From positions 1,571,923 through 1,635,922 of the forward strand of contig OZ251240.1 in assembly GCA_965240325.2 (NCBI GenBank): a stretch of DNA of 64,000 bases, read 5' to 3'. The position numbers were made by a program, and so were the translations under genes. The DNA comes from Rebecca billardiae RCC1528. Its lineage: Eukaryota > Protista > Haptophyta. Below, one piece after another: positions 6,582 to 57,900 of the stretch (position 1 is the first letter of the stretch; each line of letters starts with the position of its first letter). The notes beneath the pieces were generated by a model that saw nothing but the letters and a program-made list of their open reading frames with translations, searched no databases and was not told where the DNA came from.

Positions 6582-9500
6582 ATGGCGCGGCGGACGACGC
6601 TCAGCGCGAGCTTCCTGGAGGGCATGTCGGCGGATGTGCTGGCCGACATTGCGCCGGAGATGGCGCGCAGTCGGACCGGCTCGTCGCGCTCCGGGAGCGC
6701 CGGCACCTCCACCGCGCCGCCGTCGCGCCACGTGTCCGTGCCGAGCACGCCGCCGCGCGCGCGCAGCCGCGCCTCGTCCGCGGCCGCTTCGCCGCCGGCG
6801 CGGCTCGAGCGCACGCTCAGCCCGGGCTTCCTCAGCACGATGTCGGCGGAGGTGCTCGGCGAGCTCGCGGGCGTGCAGCCGGCGGGCGCCGGCGGGCGCG
6901 CCCACGGCCGCGCGAGCGGCGCCGAGGCCGCAGCCACGAGCGCGCTGCTCGACCTCGCCGCCGCGCGCTCCGCCGCCTCGCCGCCGCGCGCGCGCACGCC
7001 GTCGAGCCCGTCCGCCTCGAGCGCGCGCTCGCCGCGCGCGCAGTCGCACCCGTCCAGCCCCGCGCGCGCCGAGCTCGCCAGCGCATCCGCCGTGCTGCGG
7101 GGCACCGCGCCCGCGCCGCCGCCCGCGGCCGGCTCGCGCCGCGGCAGCCGCACGCCTGTCCTCTCAGAGGCGTTCATCGCGTCGCTCTCGCCGCACGCGC
7201 TCGAGGAGCTCGCGCCGGGCGGCGGCGCGTCCTCCGCCGCCTCGCCCGCCGAGCGCTCGCCCGCGGCCCGCTCGGAGCCGCGGCGCGGCGCGGCGGAGGA
7301 GGGCGCGGCGGCCGGTGCGCCCAAGCGCGAGCCGGCGGCGTGTGGCCCAGGCCCAGCGCTGCCGAGCCGGCCGGCGACGGCGTCCGTCTCGTTGCGCGCG
7401 TACGTCCCGGAGGGCTCCGCGCGCCGCGCGCCGAGCTCGCCGCGTGACGCCGCCGAGCGCGCCGCGCTCGGCGGCGGCGAGGCGGTGTCGGGTGCCAGCG
7501 GCGGCGGCGGCGTGAGCAGCGCCGGGCTCGGGCGGGCCGGCGCACCCGTGCGCGATGGCTACGGCGCGCGCGGCGCCGAGCCGAGCACCTCGCCGCCGCC
7601 GAGCAGCGCCCGGGCCGCGCCGGGCGAGGGCGGCGAGGCCGCGCGGCCGCGCGCCGCCGCGGACGGCGCGGGCGCGAGCGCGGCCGGCGCGCGCAGCCCG
7701 CGCGCCGACGCCTCGGCGGCCGGCAGCTGCTCGCGCGGCGGCAGCAGCAGCCCGGCCGACGCGCGGGCAGAGGCGGCGGAGCAGAAGGCGGCGGCGGCGC
7801 GCGCTCGCTCGCCTGTTGGGGCGGCGCGCGCCGCGCCATCCAGCCCGCGGGCTCGCACGCCGCCGAGCGCCGCCGCCGTGGCCGCGGGCGGCGCGGCGGC
7901 GGCCGAGCTGGCGCGGCCGGCGGCGGCGGCGGAGGGGCGGCGGGCGCCGAGCGGCGGCTCGCCGCCCGAGACCTCCGCCGCGGCGCGGGCGCACGGGCTT
8001 GGCCCGTGGGAGCATGCGGAGCGCGCGGCTGAGCCGGCGGCGCGCGCGCGCTCGGCGGCGGAGCCGCGCCCTCCGCCGGCGTCGCCCGGCGCGCGGCGCG
8101 GCGCGAGCGACGGCGACACGAGCGCGGCCGAGCGGCGCGGCGGCCGAGCCGCCGCCGCCGCCGCGTTCGACGTGACGCCGCCGCCGGCCGCGCGGAGCGG
8201 CGGCGGAAGCGTCGGCCGAAGCTTCCGGCTGGTCGTGTGCCACGTGTGCGGGCGCGAGCACGGCGCGCCCTCGCTGCGCATGCACGTGAGCGCGTGCCTG
8301 CGCCGCCGCGAGGCGGAGCAAGACGCGCTGCCGCCCGCGCTGCGCACGCGGCCGCCGCAGCTGCGCGCGGGCGCGCCGTCGCCGCCGCGCGCGTCGAATG
8401 TGCCCGGCCGTTACTTTGACGGTTACAACGAGGCGGCGCGCGAGGCGTACGAGCGCTCGCTGCCGGTGTGCACGCGGTGCAAGGCGCCCTTCCGCCCGAC
8501 GGCCGACGGCGCGGGCGGCGCCGCCGGGCCGCCGCGCGCGGCCTCGGCGCGGCGCCGCCCGCGCGGCGCCGGCGCCGCCGGCGCGTGCGTGTGCGCAGAC
8601 TGTGGCGGCGCGGCGCGCGCCGGCCGGCGCGACGGGGCGGAGCGCGCGGCGCTCGCGCACGGCTCGTTCGTGACGGTGGTCGAGCCGGCGGTCGGCGCCG
8701 AGCGGAGCGCGCGCGAGGCGCGCCGCGCCGCGGCGGCGGCGAGCGTCGAAGTGGCGTGGGCGGAGGCGCACGCGCGCGAGGCGGCGGCGCGGCGCGCGCG
8801 CGAGGGGCGTTGGCGCGAGGCTGCGGGCGGCGGCGGCGGGCAGCCGGGCTCGCCGTACGCGGAGGCGCAGCACCGAGCCGCGCGCGCGCGCGCGGGCGCG
8901 CCGATGCCGCCGGCGGGCGTCGCGAGCGCGCGCGCCGGCGGCGCCGAGCGCGGCGCGGGCGCGGGCGGGCCCGGCGGGCCGTGCGGCGCCGGCGGCGCGC
9001 GCGGCGCGCACGGCGGCGGCTGGCGCGGCGGCGGCGCGGCGGCGGCGGCGCGGCAGTCGGCCGGGACGCAGTACGAGCCGCCGCACCCGTCGGACGCGGA
9101 GCTCGCGCTGCTCTACACCGCGCGGCTCGCCGCGGTCCCGCTGCCGGCCGCGGCGCGCGCCGGCGGCGCGGCCGCGGCCGCGCCCGCCGCGCCGCCCGGC
9201 GGCGCGGCCGGCGCCGGCGCTGCGCTCGCGACGTGCGAGCGCGTGCGCGCGCTCGAGGCGTCCGCGGCCGAGATCGCGGCGGAGGTGGCCGCCGCGGCGG
9301 GGGAGGATGCGGCCGCGCTCGTCGAGGAGGCGAACGCCGACGCGGAGGCCGCGGCGGCCCTGGCCGCCGGCGCGCGCGAGCGCGCCGTCGCGGAGGCGCG
9401 CGCGGCGCACCGCGCAGCGGCCGCGGCGACGGCGGCGCGCGCCGAAGCGGACGCGCTGCGCGCGCGCGCGCCGCCGCCTCCCCGGCCGCCGCCGCCGCCC

Positions 9501-10743
9501 GCGGGCGGCGTGCCGCCCGCGGACGAGGAGGCGGAGGCGGAGCGCCGCGCGCCGCGAGCGCCCGCCGCCCCGCCGCCTCGCCAGCCCTCGCCGAGCCCAA
9601 CGGCCGCCGCCGCCGCCGCCAAGCGGCCGACAGCGGCAGACGTCGCGGCCGCCGCCGCCGCGCACGCGGACGCGGTGAGCTGCCTGCGCGCCGCCGCGGA
9701 GGAGCGGGTGCACGACGAGCTTCGGTGCGTCGGCGCGCGCGCGACCGACCGACCGGCCGACCGACCGGCCGGCCGGCCGATGGGTCGCGGCGCCGCCTGC
9801 CGCGTCGCCAGCGCGCGCTCCACTCTTTGCCGCGCCGCGCCGCCGCCGCGCTGGCCGGGTGCTGGCGGCGCGCGTGCTCCGGGCCGCGCGCGCTCGGTCG
9901 GCCGTGGCATTGCGGCGTGGCTGACGCGCGCACGGCCCCCGCCCCCCCCCCTCCCTACCCCGCGCGCGCGCGCACGCCGCGTGCCGCAGCCACGGCGCCG
10001 CGCTCGCCGCGCGCCCGGCGAGCGCCCAGCGCGAGCGGCAGCGCGCGCGAAGCTCGGCCCAGCTCGCGCACCGGCAGCATCTCGCGTTCGCGGCGCCGCA
10101 GCTGGCGCGCGGCACGGCGGAGGCGGGCGAGGCGGCGCGCGCGTGCGCGGCGGTGGACGGGCACGTGGCGGACCGGAGCGCGGCGCACGCCTCCGCGCTC
10201 GCCGACGTCGCCGCCGCCGAGGCCGACGCGCACGCGCTCGACGCCATGCTGCGGCCGCGCGGCGGCGCGCGAGGCGTCGGCGTGCCTTCGATGCGAGGCC
10301 TCCGCGCGTCAGTTGACGGGCTGGGCACGCTCGGCGGCGGCGGCGGCGCACGCGGCGGCGGCGGCGGGCCGACGGGGCTGCAGGCGCTCAAGATCAAGTA
10401 CGACCTCCTCTGCGCCGCGCTGCTCGACGACGCCGACGAGCCGCCCGGTCCGGAGGACGAGGCGGCGGCGGCCGGACTCTGGGGGCCCGACGCGGTCGGC
10501 GGCGCGGACGGCGGCGGCGGCGGCGCGGACGGTCGCGGCGCGCGGCCCCGCGGCCGAGCCGACGCTGGCGCGGCGCGGCACGCGCACGGGGCAGCCTACG
10601 CCGCCGCTGGAGGAGGCGCTCGCGCGCGGCTCTTCCACGCGCCCGGCGCCGAGGGCCGCGAGGCGGCAGAGGCGGAGTACTGGACCGTCGGCCCAGGCTC
10701 CGACGACTTGTCCGATGCTGACGATAACGCTGGCTTTTGGTAG
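6582..10743 (+). CDS. Low-complexity Ala/Pro/Arg-rich protein with C2HC (zf-C2HC_2, ZNF474-like) zinc finger
   Basis: Predicted join(6582..9724,9990..10743). The GTGCGT...CGCAG intron joins the 6513 and 10153 ORF frames in phase. Motif VCHVCGREHGAPSLRMHVSAC...LPPALR...YNEAAREAY...LPVCTRC matches the zf-C2HC_2 pattern. Confidence 0.7.
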
Positions 10744-40285: not shown

Positions 40286-40795
40286 ATCCGTGAATAATAA
40301 CCGAGCCGCCCGGGCCGAACGGGCAACGGCGTTCGGCCAAGGGCGACTGAGTTGTCGCGGCCCGCCTGCTTTACGACTGCGTTCCACTAGTTACTCGCTG
40401 CCAAGTCCCACACACAGGCTACGCGGCGGCCCGCGTGCGGCGAGCGGAGCTGCGGAGCGGCCTGCTGCTGCGCGCGGCCGCCGCCCACTAGTCGGAGCCC
40501 CCCTGCGCCACCCGCCCGTCGCCGCCGAGCCCTGGCCAGTATCCGTGAACGAATAATAACCGAGCCGCCCGGGCCGAACGGGCAACGGCGTTCGGCCAAG
40601 GGCGACTGAGTTGTCGCGGCCCGCCTGCTTTACGACTGCGTTCCACTAGTTACTCGCTGCCAAGTCCCACACACAGGCTACGCGGCGGCCCGCGTGCGGC
40701 GAGCGGAGCTGCGGAGCGGCCTGCTGCTGCGCGCGGCCGCCGCCCACTAGTCGGAGCCGCCCTGCGCCACCCGCCCGTCGCCGCCGAGCCCTGGC
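40286..40795 (+). repeat. Direct tandem duplication, 2 x ~255 bp
   Basis: 40286-40540 and 40541-40795 are near-identical (ATCCGTGAA...TAATAACCGAGCCGCCCGGGCC...CCGAGCCCTGGC). Confidence 0.93.
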
Positions 40796-40853
40796 ACACA
40801 CCCCCAGCCGCGCGTTCGCGGCGGGCGCGTACGCGCCCCCCCCGCCCGCCCGC

Positions 40854-43334
40854 TCACGCCCCGCCCTTCGCGCCGTAGTGGTACGTGCCGCTGCCCATCA
40901 GCTGCGGCGGGTAGCGCTCGCCCGCGACCGCGCCGAGCGGCACCGCCGCCTCGAGCTCGGCGCGCTCGGCGTCGCTCAGCTCGAGCTCGGCGGCGGCGAG
41001 GTTCTCCCTGAGGTGCGCGGCGCTGCGCGTGCCGGGGATGGGCACGGCGCCCTGCGCGTGCACCCACGCGCACGCCAGCTGCGCCGCCGTGCACCCCTTC
41101 CGCTCGGCGAGCGCGCGCACCGCGCCGACGAGCCGCAGGTTCTTCTCGAGGTTTTCCGGCGAGAAGCGCGGCTGCATCGCGCGCCGAAAGTCCTTCGCGT
41201 GCAGCTGCTCGGCGGAGGCGATGGCGCCGGCGAGGAGGCCGCGGCAGAGGGGCGCGTACGCCACCACGCCGATCCCGAGCTCGCGGCACACCGGCAGCAG
41301 GTCCGCCTCCACGTCGCGCGTGAAGAGCGACCACTCCGCCTGCACGCAGCTCACGGGGTGGATCGCGTGGCACGCGCGCACGTCGGCCGGCGCAATCTCG
41401 GAGAGGCCGAGGTAGCGGACGAGGCCGTCGCGCACGCACTCGGCGAGCGCGCGCCACGAGTCGGCGATGTCGGCGATCCCCGGGTCCCGCCGGTTGAGGT
41501 ACACCAGGTCGATGTAGTCCGTGCCGAACCGGTCGAGCGAGCGGCGCACCGCCGCCTTGAGCGCGCGCGCCGAGCCGTCCATCCGCATGTGCCCGTCCAC
41601 AATGTCGACGCCGAGCTTGGTGCCGATGACGAGGCGCGCGCGGCGGGAGGGGTCGCGGCCGAGGAAGCGGCCGAGGAGCATCTCGTTGTGCCCCAGCCCG
41701 TAGAAGCACGCCGTGTCGACGAACAGCGTGCCGCCGCCCAGCTCGAGCGCGTCGGCGAGCATCGCGAGCGCGGACGCCTCAAACTCGGCCGAATTCGCCT
41801 CGTCGGGCGCCGTGTACATGCCGCCCGAGAGCGACATGAGGCCGAGGCCCTGCCTGGGCACGCGCAGCCCGGCGCCGCCGAGCGGCACGGTGTTGTTCGG
41901 GTGCTCCGCGGGGGCCGCGCCCGCGAGCGACGCGCTCGCCACCGCGCTCGCCACCACGTCCGCCACGCCCTGCGTGCGCTCGTTGGCCGCGGCGCGCGCG
42001 AGCGCGCTCGCGAGCCGCGGCCGCGAGCCGGCCGCGCGCTCGTCGTCCTCGGCGCCGGCGGGGTGCGCGCCGGGCTTGCCCGCGCCGAGCGCGGCCCACG
42101 CGGGCGCGGCGAAGTAGTCCATCGGCCCGCGCTTCACCTTCGCCATGAAGTGCGGCGCGCCGAGGCTCGCGCCGCCGACCGCGGCGGTGAGCGGCACGAT
42201 CGCCGCGACGGCCGCGGGCGGGCTCGCCCACGCGCGCGAGGCCGGCCGCCCGTGTGCGAGCTCGAGCAGGTTGGCGAGCGCGACGTCGGCGTGGCCGAGG
42301 GGCATGCCCGGCGGCTTGCCCACGCGCGAGCCCGCGTACACCGACAGCTTCGGCTCGCGCAGGCTCGTGCAGTCGCCGATCGCGAACACGCGCCCGCTCG
42401 CGCCGCCCGGCCCGTCGCAGTCGCCCGGCAGGCCGAGCACGCGCAGCTGCGCGTCCACGCGCACGAGGCCGGTGGCGGGGTCGAGCGCGGCGTCGGGCAC
42501 GAGGCCGGTGGTGTTCGGCGCCGCGCCCACGCACCAGAGCACCAGGTCCGCGTGCAGCGTCTCGCCCGTCGAGAGCGCGACGGGGAAGGGCACGCCGTCC
42601 GCGGCGGCGCGGTAGCCGCCGGGGCAGCCGTCGGCGCGCAGCGACGTCACGCGCGCGCCGAGGCGCGTGCCGATGGCGGCGGCGGCGCAGCGCGCGGCGA
42701 GGCGGGCCTGGAAGGCCTCGAGCGCGCCCGCCTCCGCGCCCGGCACCGACCCGTCCGCGAGCGCCGCCGCGCCGTGCACGATCGTCACGCTCGCGTCAGG
42801 GGAGACCGCGTCGCGCACCTGGCCCGCGAGCTCGAGCCCGACCAAGCCGCCGCCGGCGACGACGACCTTCTTGGCCGCGCGGATCGCGGCGCTCACGCCG
42901 CGGTAGTGCTGCCGCAGCGCCGGCACCGACGTCGCGCCCGGCGGCGGGTCCGCCGGCGAGAGGTTCTGCGAGCCGAGCGCGAGCACGCAGTAGTCGTACC
43001 GCACCGTCGAGCCCGACGCGAGCGTGACGGTGCGCGCGGACGCGTCGAGGGCGGCGACGCCGTCGTGCACGAGGGCGGAGCGCGGGCCGGCGAGCAGGTT
43101 GCGCAGCGGCACGAGCCCCTTCGCCATCGCCCACTCCGGGTCGACGATCGCGCGCGGGCCGCCCGGCTTGTACACCATCGCCGGCCGGCGCTCGACGACC
43201 GTCACGCGGAAGCCGGCGGCGTCGGCGATCCGCGCCATCGAGGCGCCGCCGAGGCCGGCGCCGAGCACGAGCACGTGCTTGTCCGCCGCCTCCGCGTGCG
43301 CGCGCCCCCTCGCCGACGACGGCACGCCGCCCAT
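40854..43334 (-). CDS. AIFM2/FSP1-like FAD-dependent NAD(P)H oxidoreductase fused to an aldo-keto reductase (826 aa)
   Basis: Start MGGVPSS fits the N-myristoylation consensus MGxxxS. Oxidoreductase motifs: VLGAGLGG, YDYCVLALGS, VVAGGGLVGLELAG, VFAIGDC. AKR motifs: GLGLMSLS, FVDTACFYG, IGTKLG, SLDRFGTDYIDLVY, YLGLSE, VQAEWSL, AYAPLCRG, PIPGT. One intronless ORF. Confidence 0.88.
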   Translation of the reverse strand: MGGVPSSARGRAHAEAADKHVLVLGAGLGGASMARIADAAGFRVTVVERRPAMVYKPGGPRAIVDPEWAMAKGLVPLRNLLAGPRSALVHDGVAALDASARTVTLASGSTVRYDYCVLALGSQNLSPADPPPGATSVPALRQHYRGVSAAIRAAKKVVVAGGGLVGLELAGQVRDAVSPDASVTIVHGAAALADGSVPGAEAGALEAFQARLAARCAAAAIGTRLGARVTSLRADGCPGGYRAAADGVPFPVALSTGETLHADLVLWCVGAAPNTTGLVPDAALDPATGLVRVDAQLRVLGLPGDCDGPGGASGRVFAIGDCTSLREPKLSVYAGSRVGKPPGMPLGHADVALANLLELAHGRPASRAWASPPAAVAAIVPLTAAVGGASLGAPHFMAKVKRGPMDYFAAPAWAALGAGKPGAHPAGAEDDERAAGSRPRLASALARAAANERTQGVADVVASAVASASLAGAAPAEHPNNTVPLGGAGLRVPRQGLGLMSLSGGMYTAPDEANSAEFEASALAMLADALELGGGTLFVDTACFYGLGHNEMLLGRFLGRDPSRRARLVIGTKLGVDIVDGHMRMDGSARALKAAVRRSLDRFGTDYIDLVYLNRRDPGIADIADSWRALAECVRDGLVRYLGLSEIAPADVRACHAIHPVSCVQAEWSLFTRDVEADLLPVCRELGIGVVAYAPLCRGLLAGAIASAEQLHAKDFRRAMQPRFSPENLEKNLRLVGAVRALAERKGCTAAQLACAWVHAQGAVPIPGTRSAAHLRENLAAAELELSDAERAELEAAVPLGAVAGERYPPQLMGSGTYHYGAKGGA

Positions 43335-43467
43335 GGCGGCGGCCGCGCGCGCCCGTCCCGTCCAGCAGGCGAGAGATCGGCTCGACCGCGGGGGCCGCCA
43401 CTGACAGTGCTGCGAGGGACGATTTGAGCAGCACGGTCCGGTCGTCCCGGTCCGGACTACAGTACGG

Positions 43468-44825
43468 ATGATGGCGGCGCGCGATGGCGGCCGCTCCGCG
43501 CGCGCGCTCGGCGAGCTGCCCGCCGAGGTGCTCGAGCGCATCCTGGCTCTGCTCGGCGGGGCGCGCGACCTTGCCGCCGCGAACGCCGCCTCGCGCCTCT
43601 TCCGCGGCGAGCCGGGCGGCGGCCGCTCGGTGGTCGAGCGCGCGCTGCGCGGGCGAGCGCGCGCGCGCGGGCACGCGCTGCCGGCGGCGCTGCCGGCGCG
43701 CGCGCGCACGTGGACGGCGGAGCTGCTCGCGCGCGAGCGCGCGCTCGAGCTCGCGCGGACGCACCTCTCCGTCGCGGCGGCCGGCGGCTGGGCGAGCCGG
43801 CCGTACGAAGACTCGCCCGTCGCGCGCGCGCCTCGCTGTGCGCGGTGCGCGTGGTCGCGGTGGCCGCGGGCTACTACCACCTGCTCGCGCTGAGCGAGGC
43901 CGGCGCCGTGTACGGCTGCGGCGAGAACGAGCGCGGCCAGCTGGGGCGGGCGGGCACACACGCGCGCCGCTCGTTCGTCGGGCCGCTCTGCCCGTCGCCG
44001 CCGGGGCGCGAGCCCTTCGTGTGCATCGCTGCGGGCGGCTGCTGCAGCCTCGCGCTCAGCGCCGCCGGCCGCGCGTACAGCTGGGGCTACAACTGGTGCG
44101 GCCAGCTCGGCCACGGCGACACGAAGGACCTGTGGGGGCCGACGCGCATCGAGGCGCTGGAGGGCGTGCGCATTGGTGGGCTCGCGGCGGGGGCGCTACA
44201 CACGCTGCTGCTCTCGGTCAGCGGTGATGTCTACTCGTGTGGTGACAACTACCATGGGCAGCGCGGCCACGGCGACCAGCAGGAGCGGCGCACGCCGAGG
44301 CGCATCGAGGCGCTCGCGGGCGTGCGCGCCGTGCACGTGAGCGCGGGCTACGAGCACAGCCTGGTGGTGGACGCGGAGGGTGGCGCGTATTCGTTCGGTG
44401 CAGGCTTTGGCGGTGAGCTCGGGCACGGTTACGGAGTGGATCGTGCGGTGCCCACTCGCATCGAGGCCCTGGCAGGCGTGCGTGCGGTACGCGCGTGCGC
44501 TGGCCGCCATGGCAGTGCCGTCGTGTGCGCGGATGGCAGCGTGTACACGTTCGGGGACAACGAGTATGGCCAGCTCTGCGCACCGGGAAGCGACGGGCGG
44601 CTGGCGCGACTGCCGGCGCGTGTGCAGGCGTTTGAGCCAGTGCGTGTGCTGGACTGCGCGCTGAGTGACACCCACGCGCTGTACGTCACAGCGGACGGCA
44701 GCGCGCACGCGTGCGGCATGCGGTCGGCCGCTCTCGGCCTAGGCGTGAGTGCAGCCGACGCTGACGACGATGACCGAGTCGACGCGCCTGCGCGCATCGG
44801 CCAGCTGCCGCGGCTGGGGTGCTGA
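43468..44825 (+). pseudogene. Frameshifted F-box + RCC1-repeat paralogue of 26570-27997
   Basis: F-box (LGELPAEVLERILALL) lies in the 43468 frame and the RCC1 repeats in the 43710 frame. Frame switch near 43790-43835, where sequence present in the paralogue is missing. No plausible intron there. Confidence 0.7.
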
Positions 44826-49990: not shown

Positions 49991-51910
49991 CGCTTTGCAG
50001 ACGGGCGCAACGGCGGGAGGTGCCGGCGGGTCAGCAACGCGCGCACGCGCGTATGCGTGCTCCTCGTCCGCTACGCGCGCGTGCGCGCTCACTGCCTCGG
50101 CGCAGGCGTGGCTGCGCGCCGCGTGGCGGCTCGCGACCGCCGGGCGTCGCGGCTCGGGCCGCAGCGGCCTGGCAGGCGAGGCTCGCGCCGACGAGCAGCA
50201 GCCTGCGCACTGCGGTTTCGCGCGGGGTGCGTGCTGCGCGCTTGGACTGTCCTCTTGCCCGCGACTGCACGCACGCTCTGTGACGCGCATGCCGCTGCGC
50301 GGCGTGGCGGCTCTCCGAGCGACGCGGCGCTCGGCGCCGCCGAGCCGCACTCGCGCGCCGCCACGGCCTCCGTCTCGGCGCCGCTCGCAGGCGGGCGCCT
50401 GCCGGCAGGCGCTGCGCGAGCGTCTACCGTCTCCGTCCCTTCCCCCTCTCTCGCGCCGGTCGCGCCCTCGGCCGGGCCGAAGCGACTGCCGCGTCGCTGC
50501 GCCGCCTCGGCGCGCCCCGCGGCGGCGAGGGCGGCGGCCCCGCGGCCAGCCGGTCGAGCGCTGGCACCGCGAGCCCGGCGCGCGGCGGCACGGGCGCGTG
50601 GCGCCGCCCCCGCCTGCGCGGCCGCACCCGAGCACGGCTACGCGCAGCGCCCGCGCCCGACGAGGACGAGCCGCGCCGGGCCTCCGCGCGCCGTGCACCG
50701 CCGGTTGGCCCGAGCGCGCGCGCCTCGGCTGCGCCGCCCTCGCGCGCGCCCGCGCCGCACGCCGCGCGGCTGGCTGCCGGGCGCCCGCGCGCCCGCGGCC
50801 GCGGCCGCGGGCCGCCGGCGCCGATGGTGGCGAGGTCGTCGGCCTCGCACGGGCTCGCGCCGGCGAGCGGCGCGCATGGCGAGGGCGGCATGGGCGCACC
50901 CTCGCCGCCGCTGCCCGGCCGGCCGCCTCGCGCGCGGCTGCGCTGTCGCGGGAGGCGGCGATGGCTTTCGCGAGGCCACGCCGCCATCGCCCATCGCCGC
51001 CGAGCCAAATTCAATTATTCATGCCGGCGCCGGCGGAGCCGGCCGTACATTTTTGGGGCTCTCCTTGGCCGCCGGATCACGATGGCTGCCGAGGAACCGG
51101 CCCGGCCGGGGGCCCAACTTGGCGCGCGCTTCGCCGCACAGGCGGGCGGGCGCGCTGCGTGGCGCGCGCGCACACCGCGCGTCGCGCGTGTGCGTGGTGC
51201 CCAGCAAAAATGCGAGATGGCGCGCCCGCCGCTGCGACCGCGTGACGGCTGCCCCGTCACTCGCCGCGTGCGCGGCGGTGGCCCCCGCGCGCGCGGCCGG
51301 CGCCCGACAGCGCGCGTCGCGTTCCGAGCGCTCGCCGAGCGAGGCGGCGCGAGCCGCGTCGGGGCGGAGCCTCCGTGCAGTCTCGCACTGCACGCGAGCT
51401 GAGCCCATGCGCTCGCGCCACGTCCGCTCCCCCTCGGCCCGCGCGGTGACTCTTGCTGCTGCTGCGGCGGTCACAGCCGCGCGATGTGCCGAGCAGCGCG
51501 TCGCGGCGCTTGGCGACGCGCTCGCCGCCGCGCGCCCCTGCGACGGGCGCGTCCCGCCGCGCGCAAATCGCGCCCCACGAGGCCGCCGCGGCCGCATCGC
51601 GCTCGCTTCGAGCCGGCGCGCGCTGGGCGCGAGCGTCTGCTGGCTCACGCTCTGGTCACCTACCGGCCGCGCGCGCGCTCGGCGGGGTCGGCGAGTGACT
51701 GTGAGAGCAAATAGCTGCGTAGGGACGGTCACGCAGGGCCCGCTCTCGAGCGAGCGCTTGCTGGCCGTCGAGCATATGTGTCGGGCGGCTCCGAACCGCC
51801 GGGTAGAGGCGAGAGCGGCGCGTGCTTGGCCTCGCTCCGGTCACCTAGCGGCCGCGCGCGCGCTCGGCGGCTCAGCCGGGTGGCAGTTCAGGCAAACAGG
51901 CCGCGTAGGG

Positions 51911-54900
51911 ATTAATGCGAGGTGTCGGCCGCACTGATTTCAGGCGAGCTGGCTCCTCGCGCGCCGCACCGCCCGGTGGGTGGAGTCGACGGAACCAGGG
52001 GTTAGGGCCAACTGTCAGGCCTTGTGGGAGCGCGCCGAGTGCACCCGCGCGTCCGGCGGCGGCGCGCGGCGCTGCATAATATGCTGATTTTCGCGATTAA
52101 TGCGAGGTCTCGGCCGCGCTGATTTCAGGCGAGCTGGCTCCTCGCGCGCCGCTCCGCCCGGTGGGTGGAGTCGACGGAACCAGGGGCTAGGGCCAGCTGT
52201 CAGGCCTTGTGGGAGCGCGCCGAGTGCACCCGCGCGCCCGGCGGCGGCGCGCGGCTGCATATTATCCTGATTTTCGCGATTAATGCGAGGTCTCGGCCGC
52301 ACTGATTTCAGGCGAGCTGGCTCCTTGCGCGCCGCACCGCCCGGTGGGTGGAGTCGACGGAACCAGGGGTTAGGGCCAACTGTCAGGCCTTGTGGGAGCG
52401 CGCCGAGTGCACCCGCGCGCCCGGCGGCGGCGCGCGGCTGCATATTATCCTGATTTTCGCGATTAATGCGAGGTCTCGGCCGCACTGATTTCAGGCGAGC
52501 TGGCTCCTCGCGCGCCGCACCGCCCGGTGGGTGGAGTCGACGGAACCAGGGGTTAGGGCCAACTGTCAGGCCTTGTGGGAGCGCGCCGAGTGCACCCGCG
52601 AGGCCGGCGGCGGCGCGCGGCGCTGCATAATATGCTGATTTTCGCGATTAATGCGAGGTCTCGGCCGCACTGATTTCAGGCGAGCTGGCTCCTCGCGCGC
52701 CGCACCGCCCGGTGGGTGGAGTCGACGGAACCAGGGGTTAGGGCCAACTGTCAGGCCTTGTGGGAGCGCGCCGAGTGCACCCGCGCGCCCGGCGGCGGCG
52801 CGCGGCTGCATATTATAGTGATTTTCGCGATTAATGCGAGGTCTCGGCCGCGCTGATTTCAGGCGAGCTGGCTCCTCGCGCGCCGCACCGCCCGGTGGGT
52901 GGAGTCGACGGAACCAGGGGTTAGGGCCAACTGTCAGGTCTTGTGGGAGCGCGCCGAGTGCACCCTCGCGCCCGGCGGCGACGCGCGGCTGCATATTATA
53001 TGCTGATTTTCGCGATTAATGCGAGGTCTCGGCCGCACTGATTTCAGGCGAGCTGGCTCCTCGCGCGCCGCACCGCCCGGTGGGTGGAGTCGACGGAACC
53101 AGGGGTTAGGGCCAACTGTCAGGTCTTGTGGGAGCGCGCCGAGTGCACCCGCGCGCCCGGCGGCGACGCGCGGCTGCATATTATATGCTGATTTTCGCGA
53201 TTAATGCGAGGTCTCGGCCGCACTGATTTCAGGCGAGCTGGCTCCTCGCGCGCCGCACCGCCCGGTGGGTGGAGTCGACGGAACCAGGGGTTAGGGCCAA
53301 CTGTCAGGCCTTGTGGGAGCGCGCCGAGTGCACCCGCGCGTCCGGCGGCGGCGCGCGGCTGCCTAATATGCTGATTTTCGCGATTAATGCGAGGTCTCGG
53401 CCGCGCTGATTTCAGGCGAGCTGGCTCCTCGCGCGCCGCACCGCCCGGTGGGTGGAGTCGACGGAACCAGGGGCTAGGGCCAACTGTCAGGCCTTGTGGG
53501 AGCGCGCCGAGTGCACCCGCGCGCCCGGCGGCGGCGCGCGGCTGCATATTAGCCTGATTTTCGCGATTAATGCGAGGTCTCGGCCGCACTGATTTCAGGC
53601 GAGCTGGCTCCTCGCGCGCCGCACCGCCCGGTGGGTGGAGTCGACGGAACCAGGGGCTAGGGCCAACTGTCAGGCCTTGTGGGAGCGCGCCGAGTGCACC
53701 CGCGCGCCCGGCGGCGGCGCGCGGCTGCCTAATATATGCTGATTTTCGCGATTATTGCGAGGTCTCGGCTGCGCTGATTTCAGGCGAGCTGGCTCCTCGC
53801 GCGCCGCACCGCCCGGTGGGTGGAGTCGACGGAACCAGGGGCTAGGGCCAACTGTCAGGCCTTGTGGGAGCGCGCCGAGTGCACCCGCGCGCCCGGCGGC
53901 GGCGCGCGGCTGCTTATTATAGTGATTTTCGCGATTAATGCGAGGTCTCGGCCGCACTGATTTCAGGCGAGCTGGCTCCTCGCGCGCTGCACCACCCGGT
54001 GGGTGGAGTCGACGGAACCAGGGGTTAGGGCCAACTGTCAGGCCTTGTGGGAGCGCGCCGAGTGCACCCGCGCGCCCGGCGGCGGCGCGCGGCTGCATAA
54101 TATGCTGATTTTCGCGAGTAATGCGAGGTCTCGGCCGCACTGATTTCAGGCGAGCTGGCTCCTTGCGCGCCGCACCGCCCGGTGGGTGGAGTCGACGGAA
54201 CCAGGGGCTAGGGCCAACTGTCAGGCCTTGTGGGAGCGTGCCGAGTGCACCCGCGCGCCCGGCGGCGGCGCGCGGCTGCATAATATGCTGATTTTCGCGA
54301 GTAATGCGAGCAGGTCTCGGCCGCACTGATTTCAGGCGAGCTGGCTCCTTGCGCGCCGCACCGCCCGGTGGGTGGAGTCGACGGAACCAGGGGCTAGGGC
54401 CAACTGTCAGGCCTTGTGGGAGCGCGCCGAGTGCACCCGCGCGCCCGGCGGCGGCGCGCGGCTGCCTAATATGCTGATTTTCGCGATTATTAATGCGAGG
54501 TCTCGGCCGCACTGATTTCAGGCGAGCTGGCTCCTTGCGCGCCGCACCGCCCGGTGGGTGGAGTCGACGGAACCAGGGGTTAGGGCCAGCTGTCAGGCCT
54601 TGTGGGAGCGCGCCGAGTGCACCCGCGCGCCCGGCGGCGGCGCGCGGCTGCATATTATCCTGATTTTCGCGATTAATGCGAGGTCTCGGCCGCACTGATT
54701 TCAGGCGAGCTGGCTCCTCGCGCGCCGCACCGCCCGGTGGGTGGAGTCGACGGAACCAGGGGCTAGGGCCAACTGTCAGGCCTTGTGGGAGCGTGCCGAG
54801 TGCACCCGCGCGCCCGGCGGCGGCGCGCGGCTGCATAATATGCTGATTTTCGCGAGTAATGCGAGGTCTCGGCCGCACTGATTTCAGGCGAGCTGGCTCC

Positions 54901-57900
54901 TTGCGCGCCGCACCGCCCGGTGGGTGGAGTCGACGGAACCAGGGGCTAGGGCCAACTGTCAGGCCTTGTGGGAGCGCGCCGAGTGCACCCGCGCGCCCGG
55001 CGGCGCGCGGCTGCCTAATATGCTGATTTTCGCGATTAATGCGAGGTCTCGGCCGCACTGATTTCAGGCGAGCTGACTCCTTGCGCGCCGCACCGCCCGG
55101 TGGGTGGAGTCGACGGAACCAGGGGTTAGGGCCAACTGTCAGGCCTTGTGGGAGCGCGCCGAGTGCATTCGCGCGCCCGGCGGCGGCGCGCGGCTGCCTA
55201 ATATCCTGATTTTCGCGAGTAATGCGAGGTCTCGGCCGCACTGATTTCAGGCGAGCTGGCTCCTCGCGCGCCGCACCACCCGGTGGGTGGAGTCGACGGA
55301 ACCAGGGGTTAGGGCCAACTGTCAGGCCTTGTGGGAGCGCGCCGAGTGCATCCGCGCGCCCGGCGGCGGCGCGCGGCTGCCTAATATCCTGATTTTCGCG
55401 AGTAATGCGAGGTCTCGGCCGCACTGATTTCAGGCGAGCTGGCTCCTCGCGCGCCGCACCGCCCGGTGGGTGGAGTCGACGGAACCAGGGGTTAGGGCCA
55501 ACTGTCAGGCCTTGTGGGAGCGCGCAGAGTGCACCCGCGCGTCCGGCGGCGGCGCGCGGCTGCCTAATATCCTGATTTTCGCGATTAATGCAAGGTCTCG
55601 GCCGCGCTGATTTCAGGCGAGCTGGCTCCTCGCGCGCCGCTCCGCCCGGTGGGTGGAGTCGACGGAACCAGGGGCTAGGGCCAACTGTCAGGCCTTGTGG
55701 GAGCGCGCCGAGTGCACCCGCGCGCCCGGCGGCGGCGCGCGGCTGCATATTATCCTGATTTTCGCGATTAATGCGAGGTCTCGGCCGCACTGATTTCAGG
55801 CGAGCTGGCTCCTCGCGCGCCGCACCGCCCGGTGGGTGGAGTCGACGGAACCAGGGGTTAGGGCCAACTGTCAGGCCTTGTGGGAGCGCGCCGAGTGCAC
55901 CCGCGAGGCCGGCGGCGGCGCGCGGCGCTGCATAATATGCTGATTTTCGCGATTAATGCGAGGTCTCGGCCGCACTGATTTCAGGCGAGCTGGCTCCTCG
56001 CGCGCCGCACCGCCCGGTGGGTGGAGTCGACGGAACCAGGGGTTAGGGCCAACTGTCAGGCCTTGTGGGAGCGCGCAGAGTGCACCCGCGCGCCCGGCGG
56101 CGGCGCGCGGCTGCATATTATAGTGATTTTCGCGATTAATGCGAGGTCTCGGCCGCGCTGATTTCAGGCGAGCTGGCTCCTCGCGCGCCGCACCGCCCGG
56201 TGGGTGGAGTCGACGGAACCAGGGGCTAGGGCCAGCTGTCAGGCCTTGTGGGAGCGCGCCGAGTGCACCCGCGCGCCCGGCGGCGCGCGGCTGCCTAATA
56301 TGCTGATTTTCGCGATTAATGCGAGGTCTCGGCCGCACTGATTTCAGGCGAGCTGACTCCTTGCGCGCCGCACCGCCCGGTGGGTGGAGTCGACGGAACC
56401 AGGGGTTAGGGCCAACTGTCAGGCCTTGTGGGAGCGCGCCGAGTGCATTCGCGCGCCCGGCGGCGGCGCGCGGCTGCCTAATATCCTGATTTTCGCGAGT
56501 AATGCGAGGTCTCGGCCGCACTGATTTCAGGCGAGCTGGCTCCTCGCGCGCCGCACCACCCGGTGGGTGGAGTCGACGGAACCAGGGGTTAGGGCCAACT
56601 GTCAGGCCTTGTGGGAGCGCGCCGAGTGCATCCGCGCGCCCGGCGGCGGCGCGCGGCTGCCTAATATCCTGATTTTCGCGAGTAATGCGAGGTCTCGGCC
56701 GCACTGATTTCAGGCGAGCTGGCTCCTCGCGCGCCGCACCGCCCGGTGGGTGGAGTCGACGGAACCAGGGGTTAGGGCCAACTGTCAGGCCTTGTGGGAG
56801 CGCGCAGAGTGCACCCGCGCGTCCGGCGGCGGCGCGCGGCTGCCTAATATCCTGATTTTCGCGATTAATGCAAGGTCTCGGCCGCGCTGATTTCAGGCGA
56901 GCTGGCTCCTCGCGCGCCGCTCCGCCCGGTGGGTGGAGTCGACGGAACCAGGGGCTAGGGCCAGCTGTCAGGCCTTGTGGGAGCGCGCCGAGTGCACCCG
57001 CGCGCCCGGCGGCGGCGCGCGGCTGCATATTATCCTGATTTTCGCGATTAATGCGAGGTCTCGGCCGCACTGATTTCAGGCGAGCTGGCTCCTCGCGCGC
57101 CGCACCGCCCGGTGGGTGGAGTCGACGGAACCAGGGGTTAGGGCCAACTGTCAGGCCTTGTGGGAGCGCGCCGAGTGCACCCGCGAGGCCGGCGGCGGCG
57201 CGCGGCGCTGCATAATATGCTGATTTTCGCGATTAATGCGAGGTCTCGGCCGCACTGATTTCAGGCGAGCTGGCTCCTCGCGCGCCGCACCGCCCGGTGG
57301 GTGGAGTCGACGGAACCAGGGGTTAGGGCCAACTGTCAGGCCTTGTGGGAGCGCGCAGAGTGCACCCGCGCGCCCGGCGGCGGCGCGCGGCTGCATATTA
57401 TAGTGATTTTCGCGATTAATGCGAGGTCTCGGCCGCGCTGATTTCAGGCGAGCTGGCTCCTCGCGCGCCGCACCGCCCGGTGGGTGGAGTCGACGGAACC
57501 AGGGGCTAGGGCCAGCTGTCAGGCCTTGTGGGAGCGCGCCGAGTGCACCCGCGCGCCCGGCGGCGCGCGGCTGCCTAATATGCTGATTTTCGCGATTAAT
57601 GCGAGGTCTCGGCCGCACTGATTTCAGGCGAGCTGACTCCTTGCGCGCCGCACCGCCCGGTGGGTGGAGTCGACGGAACCAGGGGTTAGGGCCAACTGTC
57701 AGGCCTTGTGGGAGCGCGCCGAGTGCATTCGCGCGCCCGGCGGCGGCGCGCGGCTGCCTAATATCCTGATTTTCGCGAGTAATGCGAGGTCTCGGCCGCA
57801 CTGATTTCAGGCGAGCTGGCTCCTCGCGCGCCGCACCGCCCGGTGGGTGGAGTCGACGGAACCAGGGGTTAGGGCCAACTGTCAGGCCTTGTGGGAGCGC

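What the first reader, a model, noticed from the sequence alone, without database searches (positions are those of the whole stretch)
40854..43334. Myristoylated FSP1/AIFM2-like oxidoreductase fused to an aldo-keto reductase
Seen: one intronless 826-aa ORF with an MGGVPS N-terminus, a full two-dinucleotide-binding flavoprotein, an Ala-rich linker and a full AKR barrel. Established: FSP1 is N-myristoylated and regenerates reduced CoQ to stop lipid peroxidation; AKRs reduce reactive aldehydes. Inference: a two-step membrane-bound defence against lipid peroxidation in one chain, plausible for a PUFA-rich alga. I know of no description of this fusion.
Basis: partly seen in the sequence, partly recalled or inferred. 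Interest (0 to 1): 0.7.

Follow-up and report, generated by a model that had tools for sequence, protein, structure and literature searches.

The report
FSP1-like reductase fused to aldo-keto reductase
A very GC-rich alga, probably a pavlovophyte haptophyte, has one uninterrupted gene joining a lipid-anchorable FSP1-type quinone reductase to a complete aldo-keto reductase; I found this combination in no other sequence or paper, but its role in protecting membranes is still only an inference.

Summary
Window 40854-43334 (minus strand) is one 826-codon ORF starting MGGVPS. It has Pfam Pyr_redox_2 at residues 20-330 and Aldo_ket_red at 497-797. G/C at third codon positions is 818/826 overall and 53/53 in the linker, so there is one coding exon with no stop or intron between the domains.

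A family profile of the N-module matches solved FSP1/AIFM2 structures at E 5e-64; the next family scores 3e-22. Its AlphaFold model matches FSP1 best (TM 0.74-0.76). The MGxxxS, GxGxxGxE, WxxG and GD motifs and the C-terminal Lys are present. The second proton-relay Glu is Gln.

The C-module is a full AKR13-like barrel (perakine reductase, E 3e-63) with Asp, Tyr and Lys conserved. The catalytic His is Asn614, a variant shared with a few related AKRs.

The closest relatives of the N-module (52-57% identity) are stand-alone proteins of 430-438 aa. Two N-module homologues also begin MGxxxSS. No other protein with both domains appeared among the best hits from 1.84 billion representatives.

No RNA data were available. 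The full-length model gives a low-confidence linker of about 60 residues and no fixed interface. The architecture is real and apparently undescribed. The proposed two-activity defence against lipid peroxidation is plausible but untested.

The parts
40854..43334 (-). Whole coding sequence: 826 codons plus a TGA stop at 40854-40856, in a single exon
   Evidence: GC3 818/826
43317..43334 (-). N-terminus MGGVPS, matching the MGxxxS N-myristoylation consensus, with start context GCCGCCGCCATGG
   Evidence: M1, G2, S6 and S7 are identical in P0007 (MGNNTSS) and P0008 (MGALISS). Motif definition is from PMC10643123.
42045..43334 (-). FSP1/AIFM2-like flavoprotein module, residues 1-430, collinear with stand-alone homologues of 430-438 aa
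43245..43262 (-). FAD-binding GxGxxG motif (GAGLGG, residues 25-30)
42831..42854 (-). NAD(P)H-binding GxGxxGxE motif (GGGLVGLE, residues 161-168). E168 aligns with human FSP1 E156.
   Evidence: PMC10643123 and PMC10516921
42819..42821 (-). Gln172 at the position of the human FSP1 relay residue Glu160. It is Q, A or Y in the closest clade and E in more distant homologues.
42525..42536 (-). WxxG motif (WCVG, residues 267-270)
   Evidence: motif from PMC10643123
42372..42377 (-). GD FAD-binding motif (G320-D321, within AIGDC). D321 aligns with human FSP1 D285.
42132..42134 (-). Lys401, invariant in the 7-sequence family alignment and aligned with the Lys of the FSP1 C-terminal KSRDLF motif (K355 in human numbering, which I count from memory)
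41886..42044 (-). Ala-rich linker, residues 431-483 (17 of 53 are Ala). Model confidence is below pLDDT 50 over residues 414-477.
40857..41885 (-). AKR13-like aldo-keto reductase barrel, residues 484-826. The alignment starts at perakine reductase residue 5, and there is no Met at the module start.
41493..41495 (-). Asn614 in place of the catalytic-tetrad His. D540, Y545 and K573 are conserved.
43335..43467 (.). 133-nt divergent intergenic region shared with an F-box-like/RCC1-repeat gene that starts at 43468 on the plus strand

Best explanation
This is a real single-exon gene formed by whole-gene fusion of two ordinary enzymes. Residues 1-430 are an FSP1/AIFM2-type FAD- and NAD(P)H-dependent oxidoreductase. 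Residues 484-826 are a complete AKR13-like aldo-keto reductase. An Ala-rich linker of about 50-60 residues, modelled with low confidence and probably flexible, joins them. Shown here: the continuous coding frame, the two family assignments, the conserved cofactor and relay motifs, the stand-alone state of the closest relatives, and the absence of a confident inter-domain interface in the model. Inferred: Gly2 is N-myristoylated as in animal FSP1, which would hold the protein on a cytosol-facing membrane. The Rossmann fold begins at residue 19, so there is no room for a targeting peptide. At the membrane, the flavoprotein would use NAD(P)H to reduce a lipophilic quinone to a radical-trapping quinol. 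The tethered AKR would use NADPH to reduce carbonyls, most plausibly lipid-derived aldehydes or ketones. The fusion would mainly serve to bring a normally soluble AKR to the membrane. The Asn-type active site suggests a slower or differently specialised AKR than a standard His-type enzyme.
For: One frame: GC3 is 53/53 in the linker and 818/826 overall, with no stop and no Met at the AKR start. An independent contig is identical. FSP1 kinship: a single-sequence search gives FSP1 at 4e-19, with the next family at 1e-8. A 7-sequence family profile gives FSP1 at 5e-64 over residues 6-364 of 368, with the next family at 2.6e-22. The Foldseek top six hits are all FSP1, TM 0.74-0.76 and rmsd about 3 A, against 0.55-0.63 and about 6 A for NDH-2 and SQR. 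Motifs MGxxxS, GxGxxGxE, WxxG, GD and the C-terminal Lys are present. The MGxxxSS start is shared by stand-alone homologues while positions 3-5 vary. AKR: perakine reductase at 3e-63 over the full length, D540/Y545/K573 conserved, pLDDT above 90. Asn614 is not a lone lesion. In the AKR tree, four of the five Asn-type sequences, including this one, fall in one eight-sequence group (SH-aLRT 92), and this AKR pairs with two of them (SH-aLRT 90). Both enzyme types are independently linked to control of lipid peroxidation in animals (PMC12838113).
Against: There is no transcript, protein, lipidation or activity evidence; no RNA run was listed. The fusion was seen only in this genome. The closest homologues are unfused, including a transcript-like contig with its own stop and 3' UTR. 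Gln172 replaces a relay Glu whose mutation inactivates human FSP1 (PMC10643123). An 11-residue insertion sits next to the EPK motif. Asn614 replaces the His that helps protonate substrates in AKRs (PMC9427786). The full-length model has pTM 0.53 and a low-confidence linker, so it gives no support for substrate or cofactor channelling. The MGxxxS pattern is permissive.
Confidence: 0.5

Rival explanations
1. The AKR module is not mainly a detoxifying reductase. It would act like a Kv-beta subunit: a tight NADP(H) binder that senses the pyridine-nucleotide redox state, or hands reducing equivalents to the flavoprotein, and so regulates or fuels the FSP1-like module.
For: Asn614 replaces the catalytic His. 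From background knowledge, the AKR6/Kv-beta family has Asn at this tetrad position; I could not display that alignment here. Kv-beta proteins bind NADP+ very tightly and turn over slowly (PMC9317154). The Asn variant is retained in several related AKRs, which suggests a selected property.
Against: Asp, Tyr and Lys are intact, and Kv-beta itself still reduces carbonyls. The domain is far closer to AKR13 (3e-63) than to Kv-beta (about 1e-26). The model shows no fixed interface through which sensing or hydride hand-over could work (pTM 0.53).
Confidence: 0.2
2. The gene is a young, lineage-specific subtelomeric chimera with no integrated function. Two neighbouring genes merged by loss of a stop and a start, and each module simply keeps its ancestral, unrelated job or is beginning to decay.
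For: The fusion was found only in this genome. The closest N-module homologues are stand-alone. The gene lies 8.6 kb from a subtelomeric satellite and 18.5 kb from the telomere repeats. The linker has low model confidence and no interface is predicted.
Against: Both modules keep nearly all cofactor and catalytic motifs. GC3 is 99% with no frameshift or stop over 2.5 kb. The two departures, Q172 and N614, are each shared with unfused relatives, so they predate the fusion or are independent of it.
Confidence: 0.2
3. The fusion is an artefact: a mis-assembly, two genes read through only because stop codons are rare in 75-80% G/C DNA, or one polypeptide that is cleaved into two proteins.
For: Long spurious ORFs abound here, for example an 849-aa antisense ORF over the same region. 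No RNA evidence is available.
Against: A gene ending after the flavoprotein would need a stop codon, and none exists in frame. Codon periodicity is unbroken through the linker. The AKR module has no start codon of its own. An independently assembled contig gives the identical sequence. Cleavage cannot be excluded but has no support.
Confidence: 0.07

Closest known systems
FSP1 / AIFM2 (ferroptosis suppressor protein 1; PDB 8WIK, 8JSC, 8YO8, 7XPI, 9IFT)
   Same: The N-module shares the two-Rossmann flavoprotein fold plus the C-terminal region, and FSP1 is its best match by sequence, profile and structure. The MGxxxS N-terminus, GxGxxGxE with the E156 equivalent, the GD motif and the C-terminal Lys are all present.
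   Different: Identity is only about 22-30%. The module is 430 residues against 373. It has an 11-residue insertion after the EPK motif, a 12-residue Gly-rich insertion before AIGDC, and Gln at the E160 position. It carries a true WxxG motif. Above all it bears a whole AKR enzyme at its C-terminus, whereas FSP1 is a single-module protein.
Stand-alone algal homologues of the N-module (P0007, JGI transcript-like contig; P0017, Logan; P0043 = KAJ1641527.1, Pavlovales sp. CCMP2436)
   Same: They share 52-57% identity and are collinear over residues 1-431. They have the same insertions, and P0007 starts MGNNTSS.
   Different: They end 10-25 residues after the shared core, with their own stop. CCMP2436 has a multi-exon gene with no AKR within 9.5 kb downstream, although that locus contains 4.4 kb of Ns.
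Perakine reductase, AKR13D1 (PDB 3UYI, 3V0S)
   Same: It is the best solved relative of the C-module: E 3e-63, aligned over residues 5-319, with Asp, Tyr and Lys of the tetrad conserved.
   Different: The catalytic His is Asn614 here. The C-module is fused, has no start codon of its own, and ends in a 15-residue low-confidence tail.
Kv-beta subunits (AKR6)
   Same: Both are AKR barrels attached to another functional unit. From background knowledge Kv-beta also has Asn at the tetrad His position. Kv-beta shows slow catalysis and tight NADP(H) binding (PMC9317154).
   Different: The sequence relationship is much weaker, about 1e-26 against 3e-63 for AKR13. The partner here is a covalently fused flavoenzyme, not an ion channel.
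Type II NADH dehydrogenases (NDH-2/Ndi1) and sulfide:quinone reductases
   Same: They have the same superfamily fold and the GxGxxGxE / WxxG / GD motif logic, and they are membrane-associated quinone reductases (PMC10643123).
   Different: The matches are clearly weaker: profile E about 1e-18 against 5e-64, and TM 0.55-0.63 against 0.74-0.76.
Other natural AKR fusions in the databases (AKR+GST P0003; MFS+AKR P0002; MerR+AKR, SnoaL+AKR and HbpS-like+AKR)
   Same: An AKR13-like barrel joined to a second detoxification, transport or regulatory module.
   Different: None carries a Pyr_redox_2 flavoprotein.

Membership tests
FSP1/AIFM2 | N-terminal myristoylation consensus MGxxxS | tested here: met
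   The protein starts MGGVPS. G2, S6 and S7 are shared with P0007 and P0008. Motif definition is from PMC10643123. This tests the sequence motif only; lipidation itself cannot be tested here.
FSP1/AIFM2 | FAD-binding GxGxxG and GD motifs | tested here: met
   GAGLGG at 25-30 and G320-D321 within AIGDC, aligned with the FSP1 AIGDC motif
FSP1/AIFM2 | NAD(P)H-binding GxGxxGxE (E156 equivalent) and WxxG-position Gly | tested here: met
   GGGLVGLE at 161-168, with E168 invariant in alignments A3 and A4, and WCVG at 267-270
FSP1/AIFM2 | Proton-relay residues E160 and K355 (human numbering) | tested here: inconclusive
   The K355 equivalent, K401, is present and invariant. The E160 equivalent is Gln172. 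D175 lies at i+7 from E168 and might substitute, but that is my inference.
FSP1/AIFM2 | Closest solved relatives by sequence profile and by fold are FSP1, including the C-terminal domain | tested here: met
   Profile E 5e-64 over FSP1 residues 6-364 of 368, with the next family at 2.6e-22. Foldseek ranks 1-6 are FSP1, TM 0.74-0.76. The C-terminal region of the model has low confidence, pLDDT 50-60.
FSP1/AIFM2 | NAD(P)H-dependent reduction of ubiquinone or vitamin K, and suppression of lipid peroxidation | not testable with these tools
   This needs enzyme assays and cell complementation.
Aldo-keto reductase superfamily (AKR13-like) | Complete (alpha/beta)8 barrel matching PF00248 end to end | tested here: met
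   Pfam match over residues 497-797, profile positions 4-289 of 291, E 8e-64. Perakine reductase aligns over residues 5-319. Model pLDDT is above 90 over residues 481-815.
Aldo-keto reductase superfamily (AKR13-like) | Catalytic tetrad Asp-Tyr-Lys-His | tested here: not met
   D540, Y545 and K573 are present, but His is replaced by Asn614. This position is His in 99 of the 118 nearest AKRs, Asn in 4, Ala in 8 and Ser in 3.
Aldo-keto reductase superfamily (AKR13-like) | NADPH-dependent carbonyl reduction | not testable with these tools
   This needs an enzyme assay.
Type II NADH dehydrogenase (NDH-2) | Closest relatives are NDH-2 enzymes | tested here: not met
   NDH-2 structures score E about 1e-18 to 1e-20 against 5e-64 for FSP1, and TM 0.60-0.63 against 0.74-0.76.
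Kv-beta (AKR6) | Closest AKR relatives are AKR6 members | tested here: not met
   Kv-beta2 scores about 2e-26 and TIGR01293 scores 89.8 bits against a cut-off of 365. AKR13D1 scores 3e-63.

The most novel reading that the evidence does not exclude
The fusion is a natural 'Rosetta stone' showing that FSP1-type quinone reduction and AKR chemistry act as one membrane-bound unit. On this reading the Asn-type AKR holds NADP(H) tightly. It would either gate the flavoprotein according to the cell's NADPH/NADP+ state, or oxidise a lipid-derived alcohol or aldehyde and pass the reducing equivalents to the quinone reductase. That would be a self-contained anti-peroxidation module not described in any organism.
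Probability: 0.1. Interest if true: 0.75.

Novelty: new variant of a known kind. Interest (0 to 1): 0.5.

Why it matters
FSP1 and AKRs are separately known in animals as glutathione-independent brakes on lipid peroxidation and its toxic products (PMC12838113). A natural covalent fusion of the two families, with the FSP1 lipid-anchor motif kept, would be independent evolutionary evidence that the two activities belong together at the membrane. It would also give a simple one-polypeptide system for testing that link in a PUFA-rich alga of aquaculture interest. Separately, it shows that FSP1-type enzymes with a conserved MGxxxS start exist in haptophytes. The finding is limited by resting on one gene in one genome, with no expression or activity data.

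Tried and rejected
- **RNA evidence.** The look-up of sequencing runs listed no run, so read laying could not be used. The single-transcript question stays open.
- **Logan contig L001.** It is 100% identical to the window but includes the start of the divergent neighbour. It looks genomic and cannot count as cDNA.
- **Word-index protein searches.** Searches with the whole protein and with the AKR region, restricted to proteins of 454-1445 aa, found no second Pyr_redox_2+AKR protein. Both scored only the 8000 candidates sharing the most words.
- **Exhaustive phmmer search.** No fusion appears in the best 150 hits. The query itself was not listed, only representatives of 50% clusters are searched, and a fusion built from distant members of both families would score too low to appear. 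Absence is therefore strong only for close relatives.
- **Metagenome scans.** Two scans returned nothing useful, only one locus at 27% identity.
- **ESM Atlas feature search.** It gave only generic Pyr_redox_2 clusters at score 0.81.
- **13-sequence profile (A3).** It included bacterial ferredoxin-reductase-like sequences and put a rubredoxin reductase first. I rejected it as contaminated and used the 7-sequence profile A4 instead.
- **First full-length alignment (A5).** It was misaligned and was replaced by A6.
- **Labelled phylogeny of the N-module.** A tree against AIFM2 and NDH-2 references could not be built because no tool supplies those reference sequences as usable records. Profile and fold rankings were used in its place.
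- **Kv-beta alignment.** I could not display it to confirm its Asn, so that point rests on background knowledge.
- **Paper searches.** Searches for the fusion or the domain pair found no description.
Full report
**Observation**

The minus strand of window 40854-43334 carries an ORF of 826 codons plus TGA. It begins MGGVPS in the start context GCCGCCGCCATGG. Pfam places Pyr_redox_2 on residues 20-330 (E 4e-30) and Aldo_ket_red on residues 497-797 (E 8e-64, covering 4-289 of the 291 profile positions).

The region is 72-80% G+C. Long open frames are therefore common on both strands, including an 849-aa antisense ORF and an upstream extension of this frame to 44114. ORF length alone proves nothing here.

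Codon-position composition is what settles it. In this frame G/C at third positions is 818/826 overall: 428/430 in the N-module, 53/53 in the linker and 337/343 in the AKR module. Positions 1 and 2 stay near 0.8 and 0.6, and the non-coding flanks are 74-84% G+C. The pattern starts at the ATG and ends at the stop.

There is no in-frame stop after the flavoprotein and no Met at the start of the AKR module. A divergent gene with a weak F-box-like match and RCC1 repeats starts 133 nt upstream on the other strand, which leaves no room for an N-terminal extension. An independently assembled Logan contig from run ERR14847151 is identical over 40766-43602. In detail: one intronless coding exon spans both domains.

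**The N-module (residues 1-430)**

- **Sequence.** A single-sequence search of PDB puts FSP1/AIFM2 first, at 4e-19 for the reconstructed tetrapod FSP1 and 8e-15 for human. Sulfide:quinone reductases and ferredoxin reductases follow near 1e-8, and Ndi1 and AIFM1 score near 4e-3.
- **Profile.** A profile of the seven closest family members widens the gap. FSP1 scores 5e-64 (220 bits) over residues 6-364 of 368, so the match includes the FSP1 C-terminal domain. The next family scores 2.6e-22. A broader 13-sequence profile was contaminated by bacterial ferredoxin-reductase-like sequences and was discarded.
- **Structure.** An AlphaFold model has pLDDT 81.7 and pTM 0.85. Its six best Foldseek hits are all FSP1 structures, TM 0.74-0.76 and rmsd about 3 A. 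NDH-2 and SQR follow at TM 0.55-0.63 and rmsd about 6 A.

The motifs that PMC10643123 lists for FSP1 compare as follows.

| FSP1 feature | This protein | Status |
|---|---|---|
| MGxxxS | MGGVPS | present |
| GxGxxGxE | GGGLVGLE; E168 = human E156 | present |
| WxxG | WCVG, 267-270 | present |
| GD | G320-D321; D321 = human D285 | present |
| C-terminal Lys | K401 = human K355 | present |
| Relay Glu160 | Gln172 | replaced |

K401 is invariant in the family alignment and aligned with the Lys of KSRDLF; the K355 numbering is my own count from memory. At position 172 the closest clade has Q, A or Y, while more distant homologues have E.

The clade also has an 11-residue insertion after the EPK motif. 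This protein alone has a further 12-residue Gly-rich insertion before AIGDC.

**The C-module (residues 484-826)**

The best solved relative is perakine reductase, AKR13D1, at 3e-63, aligned from its residue 5 to residue 319. The whole barrel is present, and the model is very confident, with pLDDT above 90 over 481-815.

Asp540, Tyr545 and Lys573 of the catalytic tetrad are conserved. The His is Asn614 (DLVYLNRRDP against DLFYIHRID). Among the 118 nearest AKR representatives this position is His in 99, Ala in 8, Asn in 4 and Ser in 3.

A maximum-likelihood tree groups this AKR with two of the Asn-type sequences (SH-aLRT 90). These sit inside a group of eight (SH-aLRT 92) that contains four of the five Asn-type sequences; the fifth lies elsewhere in the tree. 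The substitution is therefore shared among related AKRs rather than a private lesion.

In AKRs the Tyr protonates the substrate, helped by His or by the Lys-Asp pair (PMC9427786). From background knowledge, Kv-beta (AKR6) proteins carry Asn at this position. They bind NADP(H) tightly and turn over slowly but still reduce carbonyls (PMC9317154).

**Is the fusion found elsewhere?**

The closest relatives of the N-module are stand-alone proteins.

- **P0007** (438 aa, 56% identity) sits on a transcript-like JGI contig with an 18-nt leader, its own TGA and a 378-nt 3' region.
- **P0017** (430 aa, 52-54% identity) occurs with seven near-identical members in Logan contigs of 1.5-2.3 kb.
- **P0043** is KAJ1641527.1 from Pavlovales sp. 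CCMP2436. There the gene has several introns, and no AKR similarity lies within 9.5 kb downstream, although that locus contains 4.4 kb of Ns.

The alignment is collinear up to residue ~431, where the stand-alone proteins run into a short tail. That defines the linker as residues 431-483.

P0007 starts MGNNTSS, and the more distant P0008 starts MGALISS. G2, S6 and S7 are kept while positions 3-5 vary. This is the pattern expected if the N-myristoyltransferase motif is under selection, and it also supports the chosen start codon.

Word-index searches restricted to proteins of 454-1445 aa found other AKR fusions (MFS+AKR, AKR+GST) but no Pyr_redox_2+AKR. An exhaustive phmmer search of 1.84 billion representatives gave a stand-alone N-module as top hit. 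The other 149 listed hits were one N-module fragment (P0043), AKR-only proteins, and AKRs fused to MerR, SnoaL or HbpS-like domains.

There are caveats. The query itself was not listed, only cluster representatives are searched, and a fusion of distant family members would fall below the top 150. Paper searches found no description.

**Organisation of the protein**

The full-length model has pTM 0.53, with pLDDT below 50 across residues 414-477. This gives two independently folded modules on a linker of about 60 residues that is probably flexible, with no confident interface. The model therefore argues for co-localisation rather than channelling. The N-module alignment in that run was shallow.

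The Rossmann strand begins at residue 19-20, so there is no space for a signal or transit peptide. The C-terminus (...YHYGAKGGA) has no obvious sorting motif. A cytosolic protein anchored through Gly2 is the simplest reading, but this is inference.

**Most likely mechanism**

The family assignments and motifs are shown; the rest is inferred. On that basis I read this as a membrane-tethered, bifunctional NAD(P)H-dependent reductase. The FSP1-like module would regenerate a lipophilic quinol. The tethered AKR would reduce carbonyl compounds near the membrane.

Gln172, the insertion near the quinone site and Asn614 all warn that substrates and rates may differ from the textbook enzymes. I put this reading at about 0.5.

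The rivals are:
- a Kv-beta-like sensor or cofactor role for the AKR (0.2);
- a young subtelomeric chimera with no integrated function (0.2);
- an artefact, or a polypeptide cleaved into two proteins (0.07).

**Context and organism**

The window ends in about 351 TTAGGG repeats (61862-63999), preceded by a 183-bp satellite (51910-61861). The gene is therefore subtelomeric.

Three things point to a pavlovophyte haptophyte. The G+C content is in the range of the 73% reported for Diacronema lutheri, where 45% of genes are single-exon (PMC8379373). The nearest named homologue comes from a Pavlovales strain. I did not verify the species.

**Verdict**

The architecture is real at the DNA level. As far as these searches reach it is undescribed, so it is a new variant built from two known enzyme kinds. 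The functional story is plausible but untested, and no expression evidence could be obtained. Interest is moderate.

Noticed in passing
window 61862-63999: About 351 tandem TTAGGG-type repeats (TRF consensus unit TAGGGT) run to the end of the window, so the window's right end is a telomere.
   Followed up: partly
window 51910-61861: A 183-bp subtelomeric satellite of 54 copies at 95% identity directly abuts the telomere repeats. The fusion gene lies 8.6 kb proximal to it.
   Followed up: partly
window 43468-44825 (+): The divergent neighbour has a weak F-box-like match (43468-43890) and strong RCC1 repeats (43710-44822, E 9e-55). The two parts are in different frames, which suggests an intron or a more complex gene model.
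   Followed up: no
window 8001-10000: This stretch reaches 86% G+C, the highest in the window. I did not examine it.
   Followed up: no
P0003 (Logan contig, 608 aa) and P0002 (762 aa): Other natural fusions of AKR13-like barrels exist. P0003 is AKR+GST in a eukaryote-looking sequence, and P0002 is MFS transporter+AKR in a bacterial-looking one. MerR+AKR, SnoaL+AKR and HbpS-like+AKR also occur.
   Followed up: partly
L005 (Logan SRR29340316, 2075 nt, 71% G+C): The stand-alone FSP1-like protein P0017 (52% identity) comes from another very GC-rich organism and does not start with MG. It could be a differently localised paralogue or an orthologue from a related pavlovophyte.
   Followed up: no
L004 (Pavlovales sp. 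CCMP2436, MU631307.1): The annotated model KAJ1641527.1 (P0043, 302 aa, partial) lacks the middle of the flavoprotein. The tblastn matches are spread over 4 kb and cover only parts of residues 43-417, so the deposited model looks incomplete.
   Followed up: partly
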